Notes under the pieces: model-generated
Database searches by the model: none
What the model was told of the DNA's origin: nothing
What the model saw: the letters and a program-made list of their open reading frames with translations, nothing else
Origin: Setoptus koraiensis
Lineage: Eukaryota; Animalia; Arthropoda
DNA: 64,000 bases
Direction of reading: 5' to 3'
NCBI GenBank assembly: GCA_048013815.1
Contig: CM106585.1
Coordinates: 21,576,001 to 21,640,000, forward strand
Translations under genes and position numbers: made by a program
Shown: positions 24,698 through 60,873 of the stretch, one piece after another
How positions within the stretch are numbered: position 1 is the first letter of the stretch
Layout: each line of letters opens with the position of its first letter

Positions 24698-26397
24698 ATG
24701 CCGGCCATATCAACAACAGGCACCTGTTGTAAATGGCGCAAATGGGCCCCGCATGTGAGCCAATCCGGCACAAAACTACTACTGTTGGCCCTTGTAATGT
24801 GCCTAAGTGTGCAACTAGTTCAAAGTCAATTCTTGTTTACATACGAAATAAACAACGAAGACGACAATCGTGCACCTAAATCATCATTGTTTGATCCGAC
24901 ACAATTCAAAATAGTGACACCATCTCAATTGCAAGCATCTCTACCGAAGCCGCCCGTTTCTAGCCACCAGCAGGCCAGTTTGGCCAATTCGGGTTCTTCG
25001 TCGCCCTCAGTGTCGTTCGCTGAACTGTTTGGGCCCGCTCCGCAGCCCCAGGCGCCGGCGTCCGTACAGCCACAGCATCATCATCACCATTCGACGCCCT
25101 CGTCAACTCTGTTGGAGCCCATTACGGGCGACGATGACGACGATTCCGGTTCTAGTCAATCAGGCAATTCATTAGTTGACAAATGGTCAGCTGCCATATC
25201 GTCGACAAGGCCCAGCGTATTGAGCTCGTTGCACGACCAGTGGTCATCCAACCAGCAACAACAACAACAGTTGGCTGCTAACTCGCTAACGACAACAGGC
25301 AACCCATCTCAATTGCAACAGCACCAGCAACACCAATATCAGCCAACAGCGGCCACAACAACAACAACAACAAACTCGCTGACCAACAATCAATTGGACA
25401 ATTTGTACCCTGTACTCAATCAACAGCAACAACAACACCATCATCACCACCATCAGCAGTCGCTGTCGCAGCAACAACCACAGCCACAACCCGTCTCACA
25501 GGCGCCCTCTTGGTTGGCCAACAGTGCTTTCGCAAACAATCAACACAATTTTCTAATTCAAATACCCAAACAACAACAACAGAGTCCTCTGAGTGTGCCA
25601 CAAACAAACAGTTTGACACCTTCCGTCCAAAATGACGCCTCACCTTACGCCACCCAAACAATTGGACCCGGTTCTAGTGGCGCGCCACTGGTCACTCCAA
25701 TCAGCTCTTACTATAGCTCGTCATCGACAGCTGATCCAAATGGCCAACGTGCATCGCAAACATTGTTAAGTTTAGCACCACAAACAACATCGTCGCCAGC
25801 AGTTACGCAATCATCACAACAACAGCACCAACTTCCGTTGGAGCCAATCAATCAAGCAGTGCCAACAGCAACAGCAGTAGCGCCACCTCCAGTAGAGCCC
25901 GTTGTAACGGCCGAGCTATTGAACGGCGCTAATGGCCAATCACCTCAACAACAACAATCAGCCGAGGAGGCGCTGCTCGCTTTCAGGCATCACCAACAAC
26001 AGCAACCATTGGCGAGACAACGCGAACAACCGTTGGCCTCATTGCATCACGCACAACATCAATCGTTGCATCACCAATTACAGGTTACGCCGGCCACAAT
26101 AAATCAAGGCCACCTGACGGAATCACCATATGGGCAAGCTCAGCAGACGAGCGGACAACAGCAGAAACAGATGATTGGTGTAGATTCGAGCTACTCACTG
26201 GGTCAGCACCACCAGAGGGCCCTTCAGCAGCAACAGCAGCAGCACCAACAACAACAGCAACAGCAGCACCAACAGCAGCACCAACAACAGCAACAACAAC
26301 AACAACAATTTCTCAAGCAGCAACAAATACAGGCGCAACGTCAAGAACAGCAGCAGCAGTTCTTGCGAAATCAGCACCAACATCAACATTTGCAACA

Positions 26398-26465
<68 letters not shown>

Positions 26466-29193
26466 TACAACAACAGCAGCAACAACAAGCACCAACGAAC
26501 GCCAATCAGCCGAGCTCGTCGTACCACGTTCTGACGCCAATCAAGAACGACAACGTGTCGCCGTCGTCGAACCACGTCATTCCGAAAGTGTCGCCGCAGA
26601 TATTGCAATCGTTTCTGTTGCAGCAACAGGATCAGCACGAGCGACACATGGAACTGTTGAAACAGCAGCAAGAGTTGAACAAGTTGCTGGAGAAGAGACG
26701 CCAACAAGAGCTGACAGATAAGAAGAGGCGCGAAATACGCGATCGCGAACAAAAAGAACGCTCGCAACGCGAACAGAAAGAACAAAAAGAACAGAAAGAA
26801 TTAAAAGAACGCGAATTGTTGAAAGAGAAAGAATTGCGCCAATTGGAGAAGCAACGCCAACAAGAGCAACTGGCCAGAGCTGAGCAAGCTAGACAGCGCG
26901 AATTGGCGGCACGTAAACAACAAGAGCTGGCCAATGCTCAAGAATTGCAGCGAAAGCGCGAAGAGCAACGCAAATATTTGGAATATATGGCACGCTTAGA
27001 GCAACAAGAACAACAAGAACGCGAGGCAAAATTAAAGAGAGAACGTGAGCTAGAGTTACAAATGGAACAGGAAATGCGAGCAAGAAAAGAAAAAGAAGAA
27101 TTAGAATATGAGGAGGCTCTGAAAAAGAAGCGCGCCCAAGACAAAGAAGAAGAAGAGCGCCAGCGACACAATCAAGAGCAATATATGAAACAGCAACAAG
27201 AATTAAGGCGACTAATTGAATTGAAGAAGCAACAAGAACAGCAAGACGTTCAACAACAACAACAGCATCGCAGACAACAGGTGAGTCAGCGCATTAAGCA
27301 ACAAGTAGAGGCTGAACAATTGGCCGCAGAGCATAGAAACAAACGACGAAAGTTGCAACAGCAACAACAACAGGATGACATAAACAAACGACAACAGCAT
27401 CAACAACAATTAGACGCAGCCAACAACAACAACAACAACAACAACATGAACAGGTTTCAGCGAACAAACAGCTATGATGGCGCAACGGCATCTTCGTTGT
27501 CATTGTTGGCTTACGAGGACGATCAATTGCGACGATCAACAACACCCGTAACACCGGCACAACAACAGCAACAGCAACAACAACAGCAAGAGGCCCATCA
27601 ATCAGCGACAGCGGCAACAACAGCCATTAACAGCAACAGCAACAACAACAACAACAACAACAATCAACAAAAGTCGCAACAGGCAACAGGTGAGCCGAGC
27701 ACACCGACACACACACAGACGCAGAGCGCTCCCTTCCGGTCGACCAGAAAGAGAATATCGCGAGTTTCTGGACAACAACAAACAGTGAGACAACAACAAC
27801 AATCGGCCAGTGACAAACAAAGTGATAACATAATCAGACAAAAGATACCCCTTTACTCGGGTCCCGGTCAGTACGGCCTGTATCGGGGCACTAATGAAAC
27901 GGCCGAACTGGCCGCCCTGTTGGACAGCATCACAAATGTGCTGCCCACTAGCGCCACATCACCGCCAACACCAGCTAACAATGTTACGCAATCGTATAGC
28001 AGCAGCAGCAGCAACAACAACAATAACAACAACAACGTCTATAGCAATAGAGACGGATCTAGCACTAGCAGTTCGGGCGGCTCTCACACGACTTCCGCTG
28101 CGCCCCTATCGGCCGCATCAACGCCAGCCTCGACAACGGCAACGGCCACAAGCACTACAACTCAGGACACATTAAGTAGCTTAAGTTTGAGCTCTGGCGA
28201 GGGTTCACTGTCGCCCCCATTGAATGATCTCAATGATAATTACATCATACCAAATTTGCAACAATTGTCTGGCCAGTCGGTGTCTGGTTACACGTCTACC
28301 CAGTCGCCGTCTGTGTCGTCGGCGGCCTCGTTGGCGCTACAAGATCAAGAGCCCTATTTTGACGATGACGTGCCCCGCAGACCCGCGCGTGCCCTGTCAA
28401 ACAAGAACAATCCAAATATTCAGCGAGCCGCATTGATGACGGCACGTACGGGCGTTATGACACAATTGCAGCGAACAACAACAGCTAACGGGCAACAGCA
28501 ACAACCAGACAACAACAACAGCGTCACAACGGCACTTGCCAGGCCGCTGACGAGCGCCCTCACTCAATCGAGCTCTCAAACGTCAACAGCCACTAGCAAC
28601 AACAACAACAACAACAACAGTAATCAAGCCTCTAGAACTGCACACATTGGACTGGCCTCACTTCCGCCCGATTCGGACAACGACGGAATACCCGGCCGGG
28701 CGGGTGTTGAGTACCCCGTGTTGAGCACGGTGCCCGTTACTAGCTTCTCTTGTTCGAAGCAACCATTGAATGGTTATTATGCCGACACAGAGACCGCCTG
28801 TCAGGTGGTTCACCTTTGCCAAGGAGGATCTCAGAGTTCTATATTGTGCCCAAATGGTGAGTTCTTATGGGCCCAATGGGGCGATCAGTGATTTGCTGTT
28901 CACCCTGAGAGCGTTCTCGAGAGCAATTGCAACGATTAAATTAATCCAATATTGCTATTCTTTTCTTGCCCCGAAAATAATGCCCCGAAAATAATGCCCC
29001 GAAACTAGGTACCATCTTCAATCAGGAAAAGTTCTCGTGTCAGTGGTGGTACGAAGTGAACTGTTCGAGGGCGCCCAATTTCTATCAACTCAACGACAAC
29101 CTATATAAATCACCACCCACAGACAAACAGCAGACGAGTTCGTCTTCGAAAGCGTTCAATTCAAACCGTCACAGCTCGCCCAATTCCTTGTGA
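24698..29193 (+). CDS. Large secreted Q-rich protein with a C-terminal chitin-binding type-2 (peritrophin-A) domain, CPAP1-like; 2 exons, 1447 aa
   Basis: Exon 1 24698-28856, donor G|GTGAGT, 152-bp intron, acceptor CTAG|GT, exon 2 29009-29193. Joined domain: SFSCSKQPLNGYYADTETACQVVHLC...ILCPNG/TIFNQEKFSCQWWYEVNC (six Cys), preceded by DGIPGRAGVEYPVLSTVP. Signal-like segment KLLLLALVMCLSVQLVQS. PolyQ tracts and an E/K/R/Q coiled-coil region lie in the middle. Confidence 0.9.
28968..29008. repeat. 14-bp tandem repeat GCCCCGAAAATAAT (about 3 copies) ending at the intron acceptor
   Basis: GCCCCGAAAATAAT GCCCCGAAAATAAT GCCCCGAAACTAG; the last unit supplies the 3' splice AG at 29007-29008. Confidence 0.85.
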
Positions 29194-50120: not shown

Positions 50121-50987
50121 TAAAGTGCGTAACAAATTCTAGGGTGCTTCGTGTAATGTTTATTTATTTTGATTTACTGAGCATACATGGGAGCGAGATG
50201 CTGCAACCGCTTTTGATAATATCAATTTGATGTTCTGGTACCCATAAGCTGAATCAAGTGCGCCGCCCTGGCGGATTTAAGAAAAAGCGACCGGAAAGCT
50301 ATTGAAAAAAACGCACACAGTACAAAACACTGATGAAGGCGCAAGCACAAATACATCCATTGTGAGAAATGCATTGAGAATGCTACATTGCGCAGCAGCA
50401 TATCTGTGCATGTACTTTGTGTTTTGCCAGAGTAATCACGTTAATTCAAAGAAAGGTCGCTTGGTGACGCTTCGCCATATCATTATAGCAGTATGTAGTT
50501 GCACAGAGGTCTCGTGCTAAAGTTGATGATACACAATATGTAAAACACAACACAATAATTGTTCAACATTTAACAAGACACTTGTTAGCTAGTCCCATAC
50601 GCCTCTGAGCTTGTAAAGCGTCCTCAAGCGGAGTTTTTTCAAGCTCGAACTGTGTTGATAATACACTCAAGGTACAATCACATAGCACAGTATGATTACT
50701 AATAGTAATAGTAGTATCGTAATGTTAGTAGTGGTAATAGTAATAGTAGAATATTTCATATATTATTAGTGTTGCAATAACTATATGCAGGGTGTAACAA
50801 TCTATTTAAAGCATCCATAAATTATTATAATATTAATATAATTAATGTTATATAATATTATCAATATAATATAATTAATTATTGCCGCACTATTATCAAA
50901 TATTATTATTTCTTAGTAGAGAAATATTCAAAGGACTAGAAAAAGAAGAAAGTAATTAACCATTTGGTGTCATTTTACCTTGAATCA

Positions 50988-51800
50988 ATGAATATGAATC
51001 CCGAGTATGACTACCTATTCAAATTATTATTGATTGGAGATTCTGGTGTAGGTAAAAGCTGCCTACTGCTCAGATTTGCCGATGATACTTACACAGAGTC
51101 TTACATTTCCACCATTGGCGTTGATTTCAAAATACGCACTATTGAATTGGATGGCAAAACTATAAAGCTACAAATTTGGGATACAGCAGGCCAGGAGAGA
51201 TTCAGGACCATCACATCGTCATATTATCGAGGCGCTCACGGTATAATTGTCGTCTATGATGTGACTGATTTAGATTCATTTAATAATGTTAAGCAATGGC
51301 TACATGAAATTGATCGTTACGCCTGCGATAATGTCAACAAATTACTAGTTGGAAACAAATGTGACATGTCAGCTAGAAAGGTTGTAGACTACAACACAGC
51401 TAAAGAGTTTGCTGAGCAACTCGGTAAGTTATCTATGTCAACTAAATATTCGCGAGAAATTTGTATATATTAATCATTATAGTGGACAATTAATAGACTC
51501 TATTTAGTCTTTGTTTATGGAAATAATTCGAGTTTAATATTGATTCGAAAATATTGATATCATCTTCTCATCTTCTGATCATATCATGTAAATCTTGTAT
51601 GTATGTATATAGGTATTCCCTTCCTTGAAACATCAGCTAGAACATCAACAAATGTGGAACAGGCATTCTTGACTATGGCCGCTGAAATAAAGAATCGAGT
51701 TGGCCCAGTTGGAGCCGCAGGCGGTCCCTCGTCGGGCCAAGCAGACCGAATAAATCCGTCATCAACTCCAATTAAGTCGCAGTCGTCGGGTTGCTGTTAA
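50988..51800 (+). CDS. RAB1: Ras-related protein Rab1, 2 exons, 207 aa
   Basis: [38 protein letters not shown]. Exon 1 50988-51423 (G|GTAAGT), intron 51424-51612, exon 2 51613-51800 (G/IPFLETSA...SSGCC*). C-terminal CC prenylation motif. Confidence 0.97.
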
Positions 51801-52959: not shown

Positions 52960-54117
52960 TCATAGATCCTTCATTTGTGCCATCAGCTCATCAATAGATT
53001 GAGAAGGCTCTTCTACAACATTGTCATCAACGACATCATCGCCTTTATTGCACGTTTCTTGTGGTTTTATATAGGCATACTGTAAACCCTTGGTAACATT
53101 GAAAGATTTTTCATCCTCTTCATGAGATTCAACTATTTCAATACCCCATTCATTTGGCTCTATTTTATCAACTGATTTTGGCTCTTCTTTGATTTCCGCT
53201 GGCTTCAACATGGCTGAATCCTTTTGCTTCTTGGTATACTCTGCTTGACGCTCTAGGCAAAATCTGTCACTACAACCAGGATTCGGTTTCATGGCCCATG
53301 TCGGGAAAAAGTCCTCCAAAGCATTGTATCCAAGATAGGGAGTTACCTTTCCGAATTTCAAAAGATATTTGAGAGAATTTTGAACAAGTAAACCAGCCAC
53401 TATGGCCATTGTGGTTGGCAAACTAGCGGCACAAACTCCTTCTTTTTTCAGAGTTCTCTCATCAATGTTGGAGGCAACAACAAGGGGCGGAGCACAAGCA
53501 AAACAAGCGGTTTCGCCGGGTTTCAAAAGTTGAATATGTCCTGAAACAGCATTCTCGCTAACGCCTGATTCCATCCAAATCTGTCCGAGTTCGTTGCATG
53601 CTCTATTGATAGTCATTCTTGCCTCAAAATTGTCTACGCAGCTTAGAACTAAATCAACGCTTGATAATTGTTCGTCATTGCTATCACTAGTGGATAGTTT
53701 AGCACCATGCTGTATTCTGTCTAGTAGATGAACGTAATTGTCCACCTTTGTCACATCATAATTGTAAAATTCAAATTCCACATCAGGATTGATAAAAGAG
53801 AGAGTCTTCACTGCAGCTTCCACCTTAGACATGCCTTGCTGATGTGGCTGATAAAATAGACGATTCATGTTGGCCAGTTCCACCTTATCATAGTCGTAGA
53901 GAATCAATTTACCGATGCCGCAACGAGTCAGCATTTCTGCGGCGACAGATCCAACACCGCCAACGCCAACGATAATAACTGTAAATTGTCTGATGTTTTC
54001 ATAATTTTCCACGATTGCCATACGTTTTAGAGCCATCAATCTTGAGTAGGGATTGGTGTCCACCACTTCATCGCTCATATTGGCTATTCTAGATCGATTG
54101 GGTTGCTGATTATCCAT
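52960..54117 (-). CDS. UBA5: Ubiquitin-like modifier-activating enzyme 5 (UFM1 E1)
   Basis: [63 protein letters not shown] and C-terminal [12 protein letters not shown]. Intronless. Confidence 0.97.
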
Positions 54118-54340
54118 TTTATCGCCCTATTTTAGAACTATGATGGATGAGTTATAATGATAAGGATGAAATATTTAGATACTAAAGATACCTGTTGGAT
54201 CTATGGCTAGTGCAATAATAATTTAACAATATGATGACAGCTCATGCGACTAATATCGTGTCCATTGTGCAGCTGCTGTATGCACTGTATATGCTGAATT
54301 ATGCAGTACGTTAGTAGCTCTATCAGGTAGGAGTTTGGAA

Positions 54341-54353
54341 CGCCCCTGGCGGA
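54341..54353. promoter_or_regulatory. GC-rich promoter-proximal motif core (copy 3, upstream of UBA5, opposite orientation)
   Basis: Reverse complement TCCGCCAGGGGCG is identical to 50096-50108; lies 224 bp upstream of the UBA5 ATG. Confidence 0.5.
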
Positions 54354-55577
54354 TTATTTCAACATCTATGTTTACTTTCTTGAGAATGACGTAATCATTG
54401 AGAGTTCACCAATATTTCGAATTCTCGAAGATAATACGGTCTGCTAAATTTTTGATGAGCAAGAAAGCAAAATATGAAGCATGCCAGTGGTTAGAAAATT
54501 TCGGATTGGGGATGCGAGACAACTAGCAGAAAGGATCTACAACAGCATAAGGCTTTCTCGACCACTATAGATGGCATTTGAATGCGATTTATTTGTATAT
54601 TGTCTCGATGAAGCTTTTTGAAACCGTATGGACTGTTACTGTGTGATACTAATATTTATTCATCGGCACGTCGTGAACGACGCAGTTATCTGTTAGCCCG
54701 ACATGTTCTTACATGGTGCACATAAATGATAGACAAATAGAGATTCCTAGTATTATAGAGTTTCATTTCAATGTAAACCAATACACTTTAATTTAGACCG
54801 GACTCAACACAAGGGATCCCTGCGTATCCTCCTGACAGTCGGGAATTGTGGAAATTCAACTTCCGGAGACTTGCGAACATATGTAAGATTCATGAAGGTT
54901 CATTAGCATAGTAGCAACAACATGGGCGATGATTTTGTCATAAACAGGCGAACCTTCGACCAGGTGGGAGGCCCGGTTGGACGATCGAATAGGAACCACG
55001 CTCAATTTGGATATATTTGAGGAGGGTAGTGTGCACTGATGACCGAACGAGTATTCCGGAATTGCAGAAATTCTTCATTCCCGAGATACCTGAGATACCA
55101 CTCATTGAGTATTTTAGGGTGTTGGGATCAGGCTGAAATTGCCGGATATAAAAGATATAAGCTAGGTTTTTAGTCTCCGGTATGAAGATTGGCGAGACAA
55201 CCCGATCAACAGACAAGCGACCCTACTCATGAGCGACATTTCAGACGAGAGAAGGGCCGCTACTACGACGGGTTTCGCCCTCATCTCTCCACTCACATGA
55301 CTGCATTCCATACACGGGCATAGATGTAGAATCAGACTGTTTGCTGTGAACTTCCATCTCTGTCGTAAAATATCTCGACGACCGGAAGTTGAATTAGTCT
55401 CCAATCGACTGCATTGCACTCTGCGTGCTTGAGTTGAGCAGTATACTGAGTTTCAAGCGTGTATCTTTTAATCTTCTTGTAACCCGAACCGGAGTTTTCC
55501 GAAATCAGAGTGTGGTGCTGTTGGATACAATACCTAATTGTCATCAAATAGACAGATGCACACATAGGTGCTAACAA

Positions 55578-55725
55578 GGAACCCTACGTAGGTGTTGGAC
55601 TCCTTTTGGGCTATGCTTAGCCTATCTGTTCTCGGCTGGTCGAGCTGACAAGGAAACCTACTTAGGTGTTTGACTCCTTTCGGGTTGTACGTAGCCTGGC
55701 TGTTCTCGGCTGATCAAGCTGAAGA
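55578..55725. repeat. Two direct 74-bp repeats, about 81% identical
   Basis: 55578-55651 versus 55652-55725; 14 mismatches and no indels by manual alignment. Confidence 0.9.
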
Positions 55726-56035
55726 AGAATTCGCTATTCCTACGCCCTGTTTTTGTTTTGTTTTTGCAATAATCTAAGTAAAAATTAAATACTTCTGAGT
55801 GGCTCTTCCCTACAGTGAATGTCGCCAAGAGCACTGACTCGCCGAAAATTTGCGTATTCAGCAAAATTTAGGGAGGTTCCCTTGTCAGCACAAATACGCT
55901 AGTCATATACCCGTTTTTTGTCGTTTTTCTGCAATATTCACAGTAAAAATTAGTTTGTTTCTAACAATCTCTCACACCTTAGAAAGTTGTAGGTCTGAGT
56001 TTGCACCTCATCAAATAAGTCCCACCACCTCATGG

Positions 56036-56166
56036 TTTGCACGAACCAACCAAAAAATACCTGTTCGTTATTATCGAAGATATCTACGTATCTTGGAACA
56101 GCTCTGCTTGGATGACACGTGATATTCAGGATGAGATAATCACCAGAATCCGCCAAGCCAATCTAA
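56036..56166 (+). pseudogene. Possible decayed pogo/Tigger-type DDE transposase fragment
   Basis: A stop-bounded frame reads LHEPTKKYLFVIIEDIYVSWNSSAWMTRDIQDEII, resembling the N-x-x-AWMT-x-x-I motif of DDE_1 transposases. No TIRs or intact ORF seen. Confidence 0.3.
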
Positions 56167-57511
56167 GCTAGCTGGGGTATCGCCTGGTAGGGCGTCCCTC
56201 GAATCCAGGCAACCGCCAAGGGCGGTGTTTGATAATTTGGTATTTTTGATATTTCAGGTTTCGTTAATTCGTACCTTTTTCGTTGATTTGATTCTTTGTC
56301 GAACGAGTTCGCTGGCAAGAACACACGTTCGTTGAGGTGACACCAATTCATCGAAAAGCAGTGGCTTGTCAGAAACGATTTCTCGAAAATCGAAATATCA
56401 GCCTAATTCCCATGTCATCATATTCAGGATTGATAGCCTAGTCATGATGATCGCAAAAATTACGAAGATCGTGGGCTTGAGAATGGCATATTATTTAGCT
56501 CACAATCTGGAGAGTTCACGGAAGCTATAGGCGGGTGGATACGAGTGAACCACTAAAGAGGTTTACCATGTGAGTCACGTGGATAGATTATTATTCCGAC
56601 CTAATAGCAAATAAGAAGGATAATGCACTGTTGTTCTCTATTTTCGCTGCGATCTCTCTTGGCGATGAGTACTATCGCCGCAGAGTAATTACAGATACAA
56701 TTGTGAGGTGGTGTTCTGTGGCACAGAGTCTGTGCTAACAATGCGCCGCACGCGCTTTTTCCACCTGGTGGATAGAGCCATCACTAACTCGAATCTTGTA
56801 AGAAGAGGAGAACTGCGCCAAAATGAAGAATAATAAAACCATTGTGGTGTTAGATGCTTTCATAAGAAGCTGCAGAGCCATCAACTGGTTAAACACCTAT
56901 AGATTCTATTGGCTTCGAAAAGTGTAAATCTTATACACCCACGGCACAATTGATGGCACACTAGAGGCATCGTGTGCCCAATAAAAACAGATTACTGCTA
57001 TATGCTGCATGGGCTCACTAAACAACAGTTATGATCGCCAGCTACTTCTAATATATTATACCATATATACATATAAATATATGTATATATGGTATATATA
57101 AATATATATAGATATAAATTCATATATGCTGATATGTATATCTATACAATATACAATGCACCATATACAACCCTGAATAAATCAATGATAAATATCCAGA
57201 TATTTACATGAAATATTTATACAGACATACAATTTATTATATAAAGGACGAGAAAAAAAATAAGAAAAGAAAACTAGATCAGATTGTGTACACGAGAAGA
57301 CACGCACAATCTCACACAAGAGAAGATATGAGAGAGAAAGAGAGAGGGGTCACATACATACTTATCAGTTGTAAAACATGAACGATATATTCAGGATACC
57401 TCGTTATTATTCTATTATTGTCTTATCGATCTCACAACACATATTATTATTATCGTTATCATTATTATTACTATTGTTATTTTCATAATCTTCGTGAACA
57501 TACTTAGTGAC

Positions 57512-58666
57512 ATGAAAGTTCCATGGTTCATTAGAAAAGTCTTCCAAGGATCATTTGGAACGCACAGTAGAAGCAATAGCACTGACTCAACTGCCTCAAC
57601 TAATTCGCAACAACAAAACAGTACCAATACCGAGGATCACCAAAACAAGCACACCAACAACTCGCATTTGACTTACTCAACAAACCCCTCACAAGGCCAA
57701 CCCCAAAATCAGATGACTCTAGCCACTGCAACAAATCAAGAGGCTTTGCAATACTCCTGCCCTGTAACACATTTTGTTGGTAGTCTATTTCGATTGCATA
57801 GTCTGGCCGAGTTTGACATGCTTGCGGAAACTGTTTTGGCCAATCGTCGGGACAAATTAGAACAACTGGTACTCAATAGATACAATAAAACCCAGGATGA
57901 GCTCTCGATAGCGTTATCGTTTGCCAAAATTGTATCCAATTCACAGATGGATGAACTAGCTAGAGTATTTATCACATTGCTAGACTCCAAACAATTACTA
58001 ACTACATTCCTACAGAATATGTTCTACAAGGAAGTTGAAAATTCAGATTGTATGCAGACACTATTCAGAGGCAACAGCCTTGCCAGCAGAGTCATGTCTC
58101 ATTGCTTCAGGATATTTGGTGCCAATTACCTCAAAGCACTCTTAAGGCCGCACATCGAACCACTCACTTTCGAATCAGCATCGAATATGAATAACATTTC
58201 GTATGAAATAGATTCCGCGCGTTTTATCGAAACTGATGCAGACATCGAAGAGAACCGTAGAAACTTATTAACGCTAACTGAGCAAGTTCTTTATTCTATA
58301 TTGAGCTCAGCGTCAGAATTCCCACCACAACTTAAATCTATGTGCATATGCCTTCATCAAGTATTATGCAAAAAATACCCCCATGCAACTAACAATCTCA
58401 TAGCCGTTGGCACTGTGATATTTTTACGTTTCATTAACCCTGCTATAGTTTCGCCTTATGAATCTAGCATTGTTGACAAACAACCCTCACAAAAGAATCT
58501 TAGAGGACTCATGCTCGTTTCAAAGATTTTACAAAATATAGCTAACAACGTAGAGTTTGGCAAAGAAGGACACATGTTACCATTCAACGATTTTGTTAGG
58601 AATCATTTCGAACCACTAAGAGCATGGGTCTCCGAAATTATCACAGAAAGACTGGTCGAGAGTTAA
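57512..58666 (+). CDS. NF1: Neurofibromin (NF1)-type RasGAP, GAP-related domain only, 384 aa
   Basis: EFDMLAETVLA, DELARVFITLLDS, arginine-finger motif QTLFRGNSLAS, SEFPPQLKSMC, the FLR motif FLRFINPAIVSPYE, GLMLVSKILQNIAN, EGHMLPFNDFV; these match the NF1 GRD rather than other RasGAPs. First ATG at 57512 (the track starts at a GTG at 57494). Stop immediately after the domain. Confidence 0.88.
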   Translation: MKVPWFIRKVFQGSFGTHSRSNSTDSTASTNSQQQNSTNTEDHQNKHTNNSHLTYSTNPSQGQPQNQMTLATATNQEALQYSCPVTHFVGSLFRLHSLAEFDMLAETVLANRRDKLEQLVLNRYNKTQDELSIALSFAKIVSNSQMDELARVFITLLDSKQLLTTFLQNMFYKEVENSDCMQTLFRGNSLASRVMSHCFRIFGANYLKALLRPHIEPLTFESASNMNNISYEIDSARFIETDADIEENRRNLLTLTEQVLYSILSSASEFPPQLKSMCICLHQVLCKKYPHATNNLIAVGTVIFLRFINPAIVSPYESSIVDKQPSQKNLRGLMLVSKILQNIANNVEFGKEGHMLPFNDFVRNHFEPLRAWVSEIITERLVES

Positions 58667-58773
58667 ACTTATTTACTAACGTTAAATAGAAAATAAAGCC
58701 TTATGAACAGCGTTCGTCACTAATAGGAAATTTAATTAGTAAAGAATGAAGAGGGAATGTCTCTGCAAATATT

Positions 58774-60873
58774 TCAGCTGTCCTTCTCAAATGAGTGCTC
58801 TTTCAAGTCTCCACACATGGATGTTCGCGCTAGTCTTCTTGGAATGTTATAAGATTTCCTTTGAGGTGTGAGGCCAGTTTGAACTTCATCTTTGATCTCA
58901 TATGTGACAAATCTCTCGAAACTATTCCTTCTGGACCCTATCTCTCTCTTCTGTGAATTCTCCATTGTGGATGCGATATTCTGTATCTGGTCCGAATGCG
59001 AATTGATGGCATCACATATGTCGTTCATGTTACAGTTAACTCTTTCGACCAAATTTTTCATGTTAATCAATCTCATATTCTGTGCTTCTATATTGATACC
59101 CATTTCCTCAATTGCAGTGGTCACTTCCGTGATAATTTGAGTATTGAGGTTTAGTTTATCACCTATTCTTTCCATCATTGATTTCGATTCCTGCTGAAAT
59201 TCATTTGATATCATGCTAGAGAAAGATTCGAGTCTCGCCATCGCGTCTCTTACTTTTATATGAAATTTACCTATCTTCTCGCGATTCTCTCTCTCCACAC
59301 TTTTGACTCGATCTACTTTTCCATGAAGAAGATTGAGATCTTTGGTTGTTTGTTCAGCAATATTTATCAGTTCTGTAGCTTGGGTTGTGAGAATTTCTTC
59401 AGTTTTCTTGTGAGCATCGACAAGACTTTTCTGTTGTTGACAATCTTCTTTTACTTGATGAAGTAAATTCTGAGTATTTGAAAGTTGAGATTCTTTTTCA
59501 CCCAAGTCGTCCAGTGTTTGTTTGAGATTTAGTTTTGTCGCCTCTAATTGGCTTGTTGTCTCTTCGAAGAGCAAACGAACTTTTTCAACCTCATTTTGCA
59601 TAGCTGATAGCTTATCTTCTTTCTCATGGACAGCGGCATTGACCGATGAAAGTTGTGCACACATTTCCTTGTAATTTTCTTCGTCTAGATATACCCCATT
59701 TTTCTCTCTACTTGCTTGAAGATCCCTCCTAAGTCTTTCAATCTCTTGAGTGTACTCTTTTAGCATGGCTTTCTTCGTGAGTCTCTGGTTCATTTCGGGT
59801 TTGTTGGTTATCTTCTTAGCTCTGGACGCGTAGTCCAATGTGCTCAATGTATCTTCGGCGTCTGCGACGGCAGGTGAAATGGTGGCTATGATTGAAGTTT
59901 TTGTTTTTCCTCCAAGTGAATCTTGTAGAAGTCTTGTCAATTTTGATTCTCGATAAGGTACGTGAGGCCGCTTTTCTACCAAGGCAGTTATAACTCTTCC
60001 CAGAGTTAGTAATGACTGATTTATATTTCCTGCTTCTCTGGCTCTTTTGTCTTGTGCACCTGATCTGCCTATATTTTCGCTTCCAGCAAGATCCACCAAG
60101 TTCAATTTACCAATTTTTAACAGTTCTTCGCCTTCCATAGAGCCTTCTTTGATGTGAACTGTCACACTGAAAATAGTATGCGATCTAGAGGAGCAGGCGT
60201 TCATGAGGGTGGCTGCAGTTTGACGTTTAGCCGAGCCCCTTCTTAGGATGTCGTAGATCTCAGATTTAGATCTTACAATAATCTCTTCGAGCCCTCCAAT
60301 GATGACTGAACCCTTTGACTTTGAGTCATCGTAAATTTTGAGTTTAGTTGTGTCATCCAAAGCACTCAACAAGTCATAGGTGTCTTCATTATACAATTCA
60401 AGGAAGGAGACTCGCACTGTGAATTCGTTATCCTGTGCTCCTAGTGTGTCAAAAAGTTGACTAAGGGCTCTCGGTATAATACCACATGTTGGATCTTCAT
60501 CCCAACTGAGTTCAGCATTAGAGCGTTCGCCCTCCATGGTGTAGGTTTTACCTGTGCCAGTTTGTCCATAAGCAAACACTGTACAATTGAAGCCTAGTAA
60601 AACTTGGTCGATCAAAGGTTTCACGACAGCTCTGTAAACATCCACCTGTAGGCAATCAGGGCTAAAGACTCTATCAAAATAAAAGTTTTTGACTTCGTTG
60701 GCTGTACTCCTCTCGTGAACTTTAACCTCCTTCCTATCGGGGTTCACTTCGACAACAAGTTTCCTCTCGTGTGGATTTGCCGGTCGACACCTGACAAACA
60801 CTTGAATATTTTGGTTGTGTATGGGAGCTGACGATCCGTTCATCTTCCCACATGACATCATAGGGGCAGCCAT
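58774..60873 (-). CDS. KIF11: Kinesin-5 (BimC/Eg5/Klp61F) motor, 699 aa
   Basis: [11 protein letters not shown]-loop [48 protein letters not shown], a coiled-coil stalk and a BimC box TGLTPQRK at about residues 666-673. Intronless. Confidence 0.96.

What the first reader, a model, noticed from the sequence alone, without database searches (positions are those of the whole stretch)
57512..58666. Mini-neurofibromin: NF1 reduced to a free-standing 384-aa GAP domain
Seen: an intronless ORF covers the whole NF1 GAP-related domain, including the catalytic FRGNS and FLR motifs. It stops at the domain's end, 107 bp from the convergent kinesin-5 stop. Upstream are only a short S/T/N/Q-rich leader and AT-rich DNA, and I found no convincing donor near the 3' end. 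Established: animal neurofibromin is about 2800 aa with large HEAT-repeat scaffolds and a Sec14-PH module that mediate dimerisation, SPRED binding and membrane targeting. Inference: over 85% of the protein has been lost, or the gene is split or retrocopied, giving a natural minimal NF1.
Basis: partly seen in the sequence, partly recalled or inferred. Interest (0 to 1): 0.75.

Follow-up and report, generated by a model that had tools for sequence, protein, structure and literature searches.

The report
GAP-domain-only neurofibromin of gall mites
This tiny mite's only neurofibromin (NF1) gene encodes just the Ras-switch-off domain, 384 residues instead of about 2800. The same stripped-down gene is conserved in at least 35 related mite lineages, so it is a natural "mini-NF1" of the kind gene-therapy labs build by hand.

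Summary
Window 57512-58666 (+) is an intact 384-codon ORF. Residues 97-379 match the GAP-related domain of human neurofibromin (residues 1189-1462, E 5e-85), and the arginine finger (FRGNS), FLRFINPA and K1423 equivalents are all present.

Searches of the 48.8 Mb, two-contig genome found NF1 only at this locus, and only the GAP domain. The queries were a full-length fly NF1, a fly+octopus profile, mite-like N-terminal and PH exons, and Pfam PH_NF1. No Sprouty-domain protein (SPRED) was found. A canonical Ras gene is present.

The gene lies between ThiF (-) and a convergent kinesin-5 (-), followed by LIN9. That order recurs in related contigs. At least 35 short homologues (229-405 aa), one being the UniProt Aceria tosichella "Neurofibromin", form a 100/100 clade with this one. 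All end at the same C-terminal point.

dN/dS against an 89%-identical relative is 0.12, so this is neither a pseudogene nor a recent retrocopy.

The other lineages start with MGK(S)xSK, the N-myristoylation signal type of NCS-1, joined directly to the catalytic core (human 1248 to about 1469). The window's lineage is their sister. It keeps the N-terminal GAPex helices and has a different conserved N-terminus.

Verdict: real, a new architectural variant of NF1, apparently undescribed. No transcript or activity data exist for this species.

The parts
57512..58666 (+). Mini-NF1 coding sequence, 384 codons plus TAA stop, no intron
   Evidence: dN/dS is 0.117 against L020.
57512..57601 (+). Conserved N-terminal peptide (aa 1-30, MKVPWFIRKVFQGSF...). 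It is hydrophobic and basic, with a short predicted helix at aa 6-13. I treat it as a candidate membrane or partner-binding element (inference).
   Evidence: 1 non-synonymous versus 4 synonymous differences to L020, dN/dS 0.057. Hydrophobic moment 0.5-0.65. Helix 6-13 has low pLDDT.
57602..57736 (+). S/T/N/Q-rich low-complexity linker (aa 31-75), predicted disordered
   Evidence: pLDDT about 34. This is the fastest-evolving part (dN/dS 0.17, dS 0.97 for aa 31-96).
57737..57982 (+). Remnant of the segment before the GRD plus the N-terminal GAPex helices (aa 76-157, roughly human 1170-1247). It is kept in this lineage and absent from the MGK-type relatives.
   Evidence: Alignments. pLDDT is only 44-61.
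57983..58663 (+). Catalytic core GAPc (aa 158-384, human D1248 to about 1469)
   Evidence: pLDDT 85-98. Foldseek 6ob2_B gives TM 0.86 normalised to the target. Invariant columns are listed.
58064..58078 (+). FRGNS finger loop; R186 corresponds to human R1276 (arginine finger)
   Evidence: invariant in 63 sequences
58421..58444 (+). FLRFINPA motif; R306 corresponds to human R1391
58523..58525 (+). K338, corresponding to human K1423 (Ras-binding lysine)
58692..58697 (+). AATAAA, candidate poly(A) signal 26 nt after the stop. The convergent kinesin-5 has ATTAAA on the minus strand at 58736-58731.
57395..57505 (+). 109-nt AG-free pyrimidine-rich tract ending in TTAG, 6 nt before the ATG. It is a possible 3' splice site of a 5'-UTR intron or of an unrecognised upstream exon.
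   Evidence: no RNA data
52960..54117 (-). ThiF-family gene, the divergent upstream neighbour and a synteny anchor
   Evidence: same neighbour in L021, L022 and L023
58774..60873 (-). Kinesin-5 (699 aa), the convergent downstream neighbour and a synteny anchor
   Evidence: same neighbour in L020, L023 and L018
61603..63204 (+). LIN9 (DIRP + LIN9_C), a synteny anchor
   Evidence: also in L020 and L023

Best explanation
This is the mite's single NF1 orthologue, reduced in an ancestor of a large mite clade (probably Eriophyoidea) to a free-standing GAP-related domain. It most likely works as a constitutively accessible Ras-specific GTPase-activating protein. R186 is inserted into the Ras active site, with R306 and K338 supporting it, and this switches off the canonical Ras encoded on the other chromosome. 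The protein lacks the HEAT/ARM dimer scaffold, the Sec14-PH module and the SPRED adaptor that recruit and gate animal neurofibromin. In most lineages of the clade, recruitment to the membrane is probably supplied by an N-terminal myristoyl-plus-lysine signal (MGKSxSK) tethered to the catalytic core by a disordered linker. In the window's lineage, which is sister to the rest, the conserved hydrophobic-basic N-terminal peptide may play that part. Shown here: gene structure, NF1 orthology, intact catalytic motifs, no detectable remainder of NF1 in this genome, conservation, synteny and purifying selection. Inferred: GAP activity, the Ras substrate, lipid anchoring, and the role of the window-type N-terminus.
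For: Orthology and catalytic residues. Sole NF1 fragment in the 48.76 Mb genome: full-length Musca NF1 hits only residues 1258-1531 here; a fly+octopus profile of 2980 positions hits only 1279-1557 here, plus the p120GAP domain; a mite-like 863-aa N-terminal exon and a PH exon give nothing credible; Pfam PH_NF1 gives no candidate; none of the nine CRAL_TRIO_2 loci resembles NF1. The other two RasGAP genes are p120GAP-like and a 959-aa RasGAP. Gene boundaries: ThiF(-) | NF1(+) | kinesin-5(-) | LIN9(+) in the window, L020 and L023; PLDc_2 genes are inserted downstream in L018, L021 and L022. Family: at least 35 cluster representatives of 229-405 aa all end 15-43 residues after the NDFVR motif. 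The mini clade has 100/100 support, and window+P0169 is sister (100/100) to 34 MGK-type rows that include Aceria tosichella A0A6G1SII6. Selection: dN/dS is 0.117 overall and 0.087 in the GRD, with dS 0.47. Myristoylation-type start: 29 of 35 begin MGxxx[ST][KR], 3 more have it after an over-called upstream ATG, and L031 has an upstream in-frame MGSTRSKLS. The motif is near-identical to the myristoylated NCS-1 N-terminus MGKSNSKLK (PMC5004852). Substrate: Ras with human-identical switch regions and a polybasic-CAAX tail (L034), and Rap1 (L033). SPRED not found: no Sprouty domain over cut-off, and the WH1 proteins are WASP-, Ena- and Homer-like.
Against: There is no RNA evidence for this species, so the transcript ends are inferred. 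An AG-free tract plus TTAG lies 6 nt upstream of the ATG, which leaves room for an upstream exon. The window-type protein has no MG start, so lipid anchoring cannot be claimed for it. Residues 98-150 fold with low confidence without their C-terminal GAPex partner. The whole-genome searches use a loose first look and could miss very divergent remnants. The assembly is represented by two contigs only, so unplaced sequence cannot be excluded. Absence of the rest of NF1 was tested in this one genome, not in the relatives, which are single contigs. GAP activity is untested.
Confidence: 0.78

Rival explanations
1. The gene has further unrecognised exons, and the real protein is longer than 384 aa. 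One possibility is a small 5' exon that supplies a different N-terminus, for instance a myristoylation signal. Another is distant 3' exons.
For: A 109-nt AG-free pyrimidine tract ending in TTAG sits 6 nt before the ATG and is conserved in L020. The 3.4-kb upstream spacer is long for this genome. Sister lineages carry an MGK start that this one lacks.
Against: The only MGxxx[STAGCN] codon string in the spacer (57009) has no phase-compatible consensus donor. The spacer is filled with dispersed short repeats. The stop is followed after 26 nt by AATAAA and after 107 nt by the end of kinesin-5. The same C-terminal end occurs in 36 lineages. No NF1-like coding sequence exists elsewhere in the genome to splice to.
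Confidence: 0.12
2. NF1 is split: the scaffold and Sec14-PH parts survive as separate genes, so diverged that sequence searches miss them.
For: The genome searches rely on a loose first filter. Eriophyoid proteins evolve fast (the stem of the mini clade is 0.64 substitutions per site).
Against: NF1 flanks are strongly conserved: the fly and a mite-like N-terminal exon are 42% identical over 774 aa. Yet neither single proteins, a profile, nor Pfam PH_NF1 gave any candidate. The same searches did pick up a RasGAP domain at 24-31% identity.
Confidence: 0.05
3. This is a partial duplicate or decaying relic, and Ras regulation is done by other GAPs.
For: Two other RasGAP genes exist. Domain-stripped extra copies of other proteins are reported for this genome by earlier agents (s1-321320).
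Against: No parent copy exists in the genome. dN/dS is 0.09 in the GRD. All catalytic and Ras-contact columns are invariant across 63 sequences. The synteny is conserved.
Confidence: 0.05

Closest known systems
Animal neurofibromin (NF1; human about 2818 aa, Drosophila about 2800 aa)
   Same: It is an orthologous GAP-related domain: 53-60% identity to human and fly over about 280 residues. The FRGNS arginine finger, FLRFINPA and K1423 are the same. It groups inside arthropod NF1 in the tree.
   Different: It lacks the N-terminal HEAT/ARM region, the C-terminal half of GAPex, Sec14-PH and the C-terminal HEAT/ARM region. More than 85% of the protein is gone, so the dimer interface, the closed/open autoinhibition and the canonical SPRED-binding surface (which needs both GAPex ends; my recollection of the KRAS-NF1-SPRED1 work, PDB 6V65) cannot exist.
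Engineered membrane-targeted NF1-GRD payloads (GRD 1200-1532 fused to the KRAS4B C-terminal 24 aa; Nat Commun 2025, PMC12480499)
   Same: The design logic is the same: an isolated GRD plus a short lipid/polybasic membrane anchor, with no scaffold and no dimerisation. The MGK-type mite proteins look like the natural N-terminal-anchor version.
   Different: In the mites the anchor is N-terminal (predicted myristoyl plus Lys) rather than a C-terminal CAAX/polybasic tail. The mite core is shorter (about 1248-1469, without GAPex). The window's own protein has no recognisable lipidation motif.
NF1-230 minimal catalytic fragment / GAPc (human 1248-1477) defined biochemically and in the 1NF1 structure (from memory)
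   Same: The MGK-type proteins begin their NF1 homology at the residue equivalent to D1248 and end near 1469, almost exactly the minimal active fragment.
   Different: The fragment is a laboratory construct. Here it is a native gene product with its own leader. In several lineages it also carries a 20-90-aa low-complexity insertion after helix alpha-2c.
Yeast Ira1/Ira2 and other RasGAPs (p120GAP, SynGAP)
   Same: They share the RasGAP fold and the arginine-finger mechanism.
   Different: They are much more distant in sequence (E 1e-17 to 1e-20, against 5e-85 for NF1). All of them are large multidomain proteins.

Membership tests
Neurofibromin (NF1) orthologue group | GAP-related domain closer to NF1 than to any other RasGAP subfamily | tested here: met
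   E 5e-85 to human NF1 versus 9e-20 to p120GAP. It is nested within arthropod NF1 sequences.
Neurofibromin (NF1) orthologue group | Catalytic arginine finger (FRGNS), FLR motif and the K1423 equivalent | tested here: met
   R186, R306 and K338 are present and invariant in 63 aligned sequences.
Neurofibromin (NF1) orthologue group | Sec14-PH module C-terminal to the GRD | tested here: not met
   The ORF stops at about human 1469, 107 nt from the next gene. Pfam PH_NF1 gives no hit in the genome. The CRAL_TRIO_2 loci are unrelated to NF1.
Neurofibromin (NF1) orthologue group | N- and C-terminal HEAT/ARM scaffold that forms the dimer | tested here: not met
   No match anywhere in the genome with a protein, a profile or a mite-like exon.
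Neurofibromin (NF1) orthologue group | Complete GAPex (both N- and C-terminal extra helices, the SPRED1-binding surface) | tested here: not met
   Only the N-terminal half is present in the window type, and none in the MGK type. SPRED itself was not found.
Neurofibromin (NF1) orthologue group | Ras-GAP activity | not testable with these tools
   This needs a biochemical assay. The substrate gene is present.
N-myristoylated proteins (MGxxxS/T signal), for the MGK-type relatives | Gly2, small residue or Ser/Thr at position 6, no Pro at position 7, basic residues nearby | tested here: met
   29 of 35 representatives start MGxxx[ST][KR]. The motif matches the myristoylated NCS-1 N-terminus MGKSNSKLK. 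Actual lipidation was not tested.
N-myristoylated proteins (MGxxxS/T signal), for the window's own protein | Gly at position 2 | tested here: not met
   The protein starts MKVPWF in both the window and L020.

The most novel reading that the evidence does not exclude
A whole radiation of animals (eriophyoid gall and rust mites) has dispensed with every part of neurofibromin except the catalytic GAP core. They have replaced SPRED-, Sec14-PH- and dimer-dependent recruitment by a simple N-terminal lipid or amphipathic anchor. This is a natural, long-tested equivalent of the engineered membrane-targeted GRD. It implies that the non-GAP functions of NF1 are dispensable for making a viable animal with a nervous system. 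The window's lineage would be an intermediate that still carries half of GAPex.
Probability: 0.45. Interest if true: 0.8.

Novelty: new variant of a known kind. Interest (0 to 1): 0.66.

Why it matters
Neurofibromin is one of the largest and best-conserved tumour suppressors. Which of its 2800 residues matter beyond the GAP domain is a long-standing question. The gene's size is also the main obstacle to NF1 gene replacement: AAV payloads are truncated GRDs with an added membrane anchor (PMC12480499).

Here evolution has carried out that truncation in an animal lineage and kept the result under purifying selection in dozens of species. That defines natural domain boundaries (about 1248-1469). 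It offers a candidate alternative anchor (N-terminal myristoyl plus Lys with a flexible linker). It also gives sequence variants of a stand-alone GRD that must fold and work without GAPex, Sec14-PH or dimerisation. Finally, it gives a clean test of whether SPRED loss and NF1 scaffold loss go together.

Tried and rejected
- GTG 57494 as the start: rejected. It is GTG in the relative too, and the first ATG is conserved.
- The 860-aa ORF upstream of the L018 homologue as a possible NF1 N-terminus: rejected. It is an ARM/catenin-like protein with no NF1 similarity.
- The nine CRAL_TRIO_2 loci as a detached NF1 Sec14: rejected by tblastn.
- The weak Sprouty hit L025: a GC-rich stretch with no credible ORF.
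- The Ras-family gene 6 kb upstream (50964-51473): it is Rab1, not a Ras substrate.
- MGSLNNS at 57009 as a hidden myristoylated first exon: it has no phase-compatible consensus donor and cannot be checked in the relative, whose contig ends 327 nt upstream.
- Short Logan contigs L031 and L032 as possible transcripts: no poly(A) tails; they look genomic.
- Rfam scan of 54000-58900: nothing. The bacterial promoter/terminator scan is irrelevant for a eukaryote.
- Ten- and three-sequence NF1 profiles were too wide for the genome search, so a two-sequence profile was used.
- Literature: no mention of NF1 in the Aculops genome paper. Searches for neurofibromin plus mite, and for NF1 evolution, found no description.
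- Species identification from the Floracarus preprint failed.
- No fetched contig was taken for human. P0221, a human NF1 protein fragment returned by the word search, served only as a row in alignment A3 and in the tree.

Full report
**1. What is in the sequence**

The frame 57494-58666 (+) is open for 390 codons from a GTG. The GTG is also GTG in an 89%-identical relative, and the ATG and the following 30 codons are nearly unchanged. I therefore take 57512 as the start.

Pfam finds a full RasGAP domain at 115 bits. Against PDB sequences the best matches are human neurofibromin residues 1189-1462 at E 5e-85. That is far ahead of p120GAP (9e-20), SynGAP and IQGAP.

The finger loop FRGNS lies at 58064-78 (R186 = human R1276). 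FLRFINPA lies at 58421-44 (R306 = R1391). K338 (= K1423) is also present. These columns are invariant in 63 aligned NF1 sequences.

An AlphaFold model built on that alignment has pLDDT 85-98 over residues about 155-380. It superposes on the KRAS-bound NF1 GRD (6ob2_B, target-normalised TM 0.86). Residues 1-97 are predicted disordered. Residues 98-150, the N-terminal GAPex helices, are of low confidence.

The stop is followed by AATAAA after 26 nt and by the stop of a convergent kinesin-5 after 107 nt.

**2. Is the rest of NF1 anywhere?**

The window lies at C1:21,576,001-21,640,000 of a 48.76 Mb genome held as two contigs of about 24 Mb.

- A full-length Musca NF1 (P0004, 2794 aa) matches this genome only with its residues 1258-1531 at this locus. 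It also matches weakly to the GAP domains of the two other RasGAP genes.
- A fly+octopus profile covering all 2980 alignment positions gives the same answer: E 3.9e-107 here, p120GAP second, nothing else at E <= 10.
- An 863-aa N-terminal NF1 exon and a PH exon from an intron-poor, mite-like contig (L019) give no credible hit. That N-terminal exon is 42% identical to fly NF1 over 774 aa.
- Pfam PH_NF1 gives no candidate.
- Nine CRAL_TRIO_2 loci exist, but none resembles the NF1 Sec14 region in a local tblastn. The 64-kb window likewise holds no other NF1 fragment.
- The other RasGAPs are an SH2-SH3-SH2-PH p120GAP-like gene and a 959-aa RasGAP.

Within the sensitivity of these searches, this ORF is the only NF1-derived sequence in the genome.

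**3. Gene boundaries and conservation**

Upstream, on the opposite strand, lies a ThiF-family gene (52960-54117). Downstream lie kinesin-5 (-) and LIN9 (+).

The same order, NF1(+) | kinesin-5(-) | LIN9(+), is on the contig of the close relative (L020). L023 shows ThiF(-) | NF1(+) | kinesin-5(-) | LIN9(+) | Sec1 | Iso_dh. L018, L021 and L022 differ only by PLDc_2 genes inserted after NF1. There is no room for further NF1 exons on either side.

The 3.4-kb spacer between ThiF and NF1 holds no credible ORF. It is made largely of short dispersed repeats present at dozens of places in the genome.

**4. A family of mini-NF1s**

The word search returned many short NF1-like ORFs. Thirty-five cluster representatives (229-405 aa) share the same C-terminal end, 15-43 residues after NDFVR and typically ...FEPxRxWVxEISSE.

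One of them is UniProt A0A6G1SII6, "Neurofibromin", Aceria tosichella, 280 aa. This places the clade in Eriophyoidea, in line with what earlier agents inferred for this genome.

In a maximum-likelihood tree the 36 short proteins form one clade (100/100) on a long stem inside arthropod NF1. The window plus its close relative P0169 is sister (100/100) to the other 34. The C-terminal truncation is therefore old and shared.

Against P0169's gene, dN/dS is 0.117 overall. It is 0.087 in the GRD and 0.057 in the first 30 codons, at dS 0.47. The gene is under clear purifying selection.

**5. Two architectures**

The 34 sister lineages start NF1 homology at the residue equivalent to human D1248, the N-terminal boundary of the minimal catalytic fragment. 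They have no GAPex at all.

Twenty-nine of 35 begin MGxxx[ST][KR], mostly MGKSSSKLS or MGKSNSKHL. Three more carry it a few residues after an over-called ATG. One further locus has an upstream in-frame MGSTRSKLS. This is the type of signal found at the myristoylated N-terminus of NCS-1, MGKSNSKLK (PMC5004852). A variable low-complexity linker joins it to the core.

The window's lineage is different. It keeps about 80 residues corresponding to human about 1170-1247, the N-terminal GAPex. It begins MKVPWFIRKVFQGSF, a conserved hydrophobic-basic peptide with a moderate helical hydrophobic moment. It has no Gly2.

**6. Pathway context**

A canonical Ras is encoded on C2. Its switch regions are identical to human Ras as I recall it, and its tail is polybasic-CAAX. 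A Rap1 is encoded on C1.

No Sprouty-domain protein was found. The three WH1 proteins are WASP-, Ena- and Homer-like, so SPRED was not found with these queries.

**7. How it most likely works**

Shown: an intact, selected, stand-alone NF1 GAP domain that is the only NF1 remnant.

Inferred: it stimulates GTP hydrolysis on Ras by the arginine-finger mechanism. Because it lacks the scaffold, Sec14-PH and the dimer, it cannot adopt the autoinhibited closed state of animal neurofibromin, and it cannot be delivered by SPRED. Membrane proximity is instead provided by an N-terminal anchor. That anchor is probably myristate plus lysines in most lineages, and possibly an amphipathic peptide in this one.

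This parallels the engineered GRD-KRAS4B-tail payload developed for NF1 gene therapy (PMC12480499).

**8. Caveats**

- There is no RNA evidence for this species.
- A 109-nt AG-free pyrimidine tract ending in TTAG lies 6 nt before the ATG. It resembles the acceptors another agent noted in this genome (s1-318736). It could mark a 5'-UTR intron or, less likely, an upstream coding exon.
- The genome searches use a loose first filter, and unplaced contigs may exist.
- Absence of the rest of NF1 was tested only in this genome.
- Activity and lipidation are untested.

**9. Novelty**

I found no description of a GRD-only NF1 in the eriophyoid genome paper or in searches on neurofibromin in mites or NF1 evolution. 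The sequences themselves are public, one under the name Neurofibromin.

Earlier agents report other domain-stripped proteins in this genome (mini-Miro, core-only CBP). Domain loss is thus a general trend here, which tempers the surprise. For NF1, however, the reduced gene is the only copy.

I class it as a new variant of a known kind.

Noticed in passing
window 58774-60873 (-); L020:1615-3702, L023:4294-6480, L018:12662-14530: Kinesin-5 is only 622-728 aa in these mites, against roughly 1000-1100 aa elsewhere (from memory). It has a full motor domain, a short stalk, and the BimC-box-like TPQRK motif about 30 residues from the C-terminus.
   Followed up: partly
window 54200-57000: The 3.4-kb ThiF-NF1 spacer is a patchwork of short dispersed repeats: window 54984-55123, 55570-55648 plus 55887-55984, and about 56378-56578, each with many copies genome-wide. 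At C2:275955-276130 two of the pieces are contiguous, so the window copy carries a 238-bp insertion. They are MITE-like.
   Followed up: partly
window 57395-57505: A 109-nt AG-free pyrimidine-rich tract ends in TTAG 6 nt upstream of the NF1 start codon and is conserved in L020. It may be the acceptor of a 5'-UTR intron.
   Followed up: partly
L021:5263-12794 and L022:5256-12857; L018:11430-11927: Tandem clusters of five PLDc_2 (PLD-like) genes sit immediately downstream of mini-NF1 in some relatives. One carries a REPA_OB_2 hit. A single copy is present in L018 and none in the window. This is a lineage-specific expansion of unknown role.
   Followed up: no
window 24698-28891 (+): A 1397-aa intronless ORF with a signal-peptide-like start and extreme Q/S/T/P/H low-complexity content (AT skew up to 0.53). 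It has no Pfam family and may be a secreted mucin- or saliva-like protein.
   Followed up: partly
L034:1354-1971 (G000 C2:23.24 Mb): The canonical Ras has a strongly polybasic tail ending in CNVL (CAAX with Leu, which would predict geranylgeranylation, from memory).
   Followed up: no
L019 (Logan SRR16940210): An unidentified intron-poor arthropod contig carries a full-length NF1 in a few very large exons: an 863-aa N-terminal exon, the GRD, Sec14 and PH_NF1. It belongs to the sister group of the mini-NF1 clade in the tree and could serve as an outgroup for dating the truncation.
   Followed up: partly
window 50964-51473 (+): A Rab1 gene lies 6 kb upstream of the RasGAP. The ORF covers Rab1A residues about 7-158 only, so a C-terminal exon is likely.
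   Followed up: no
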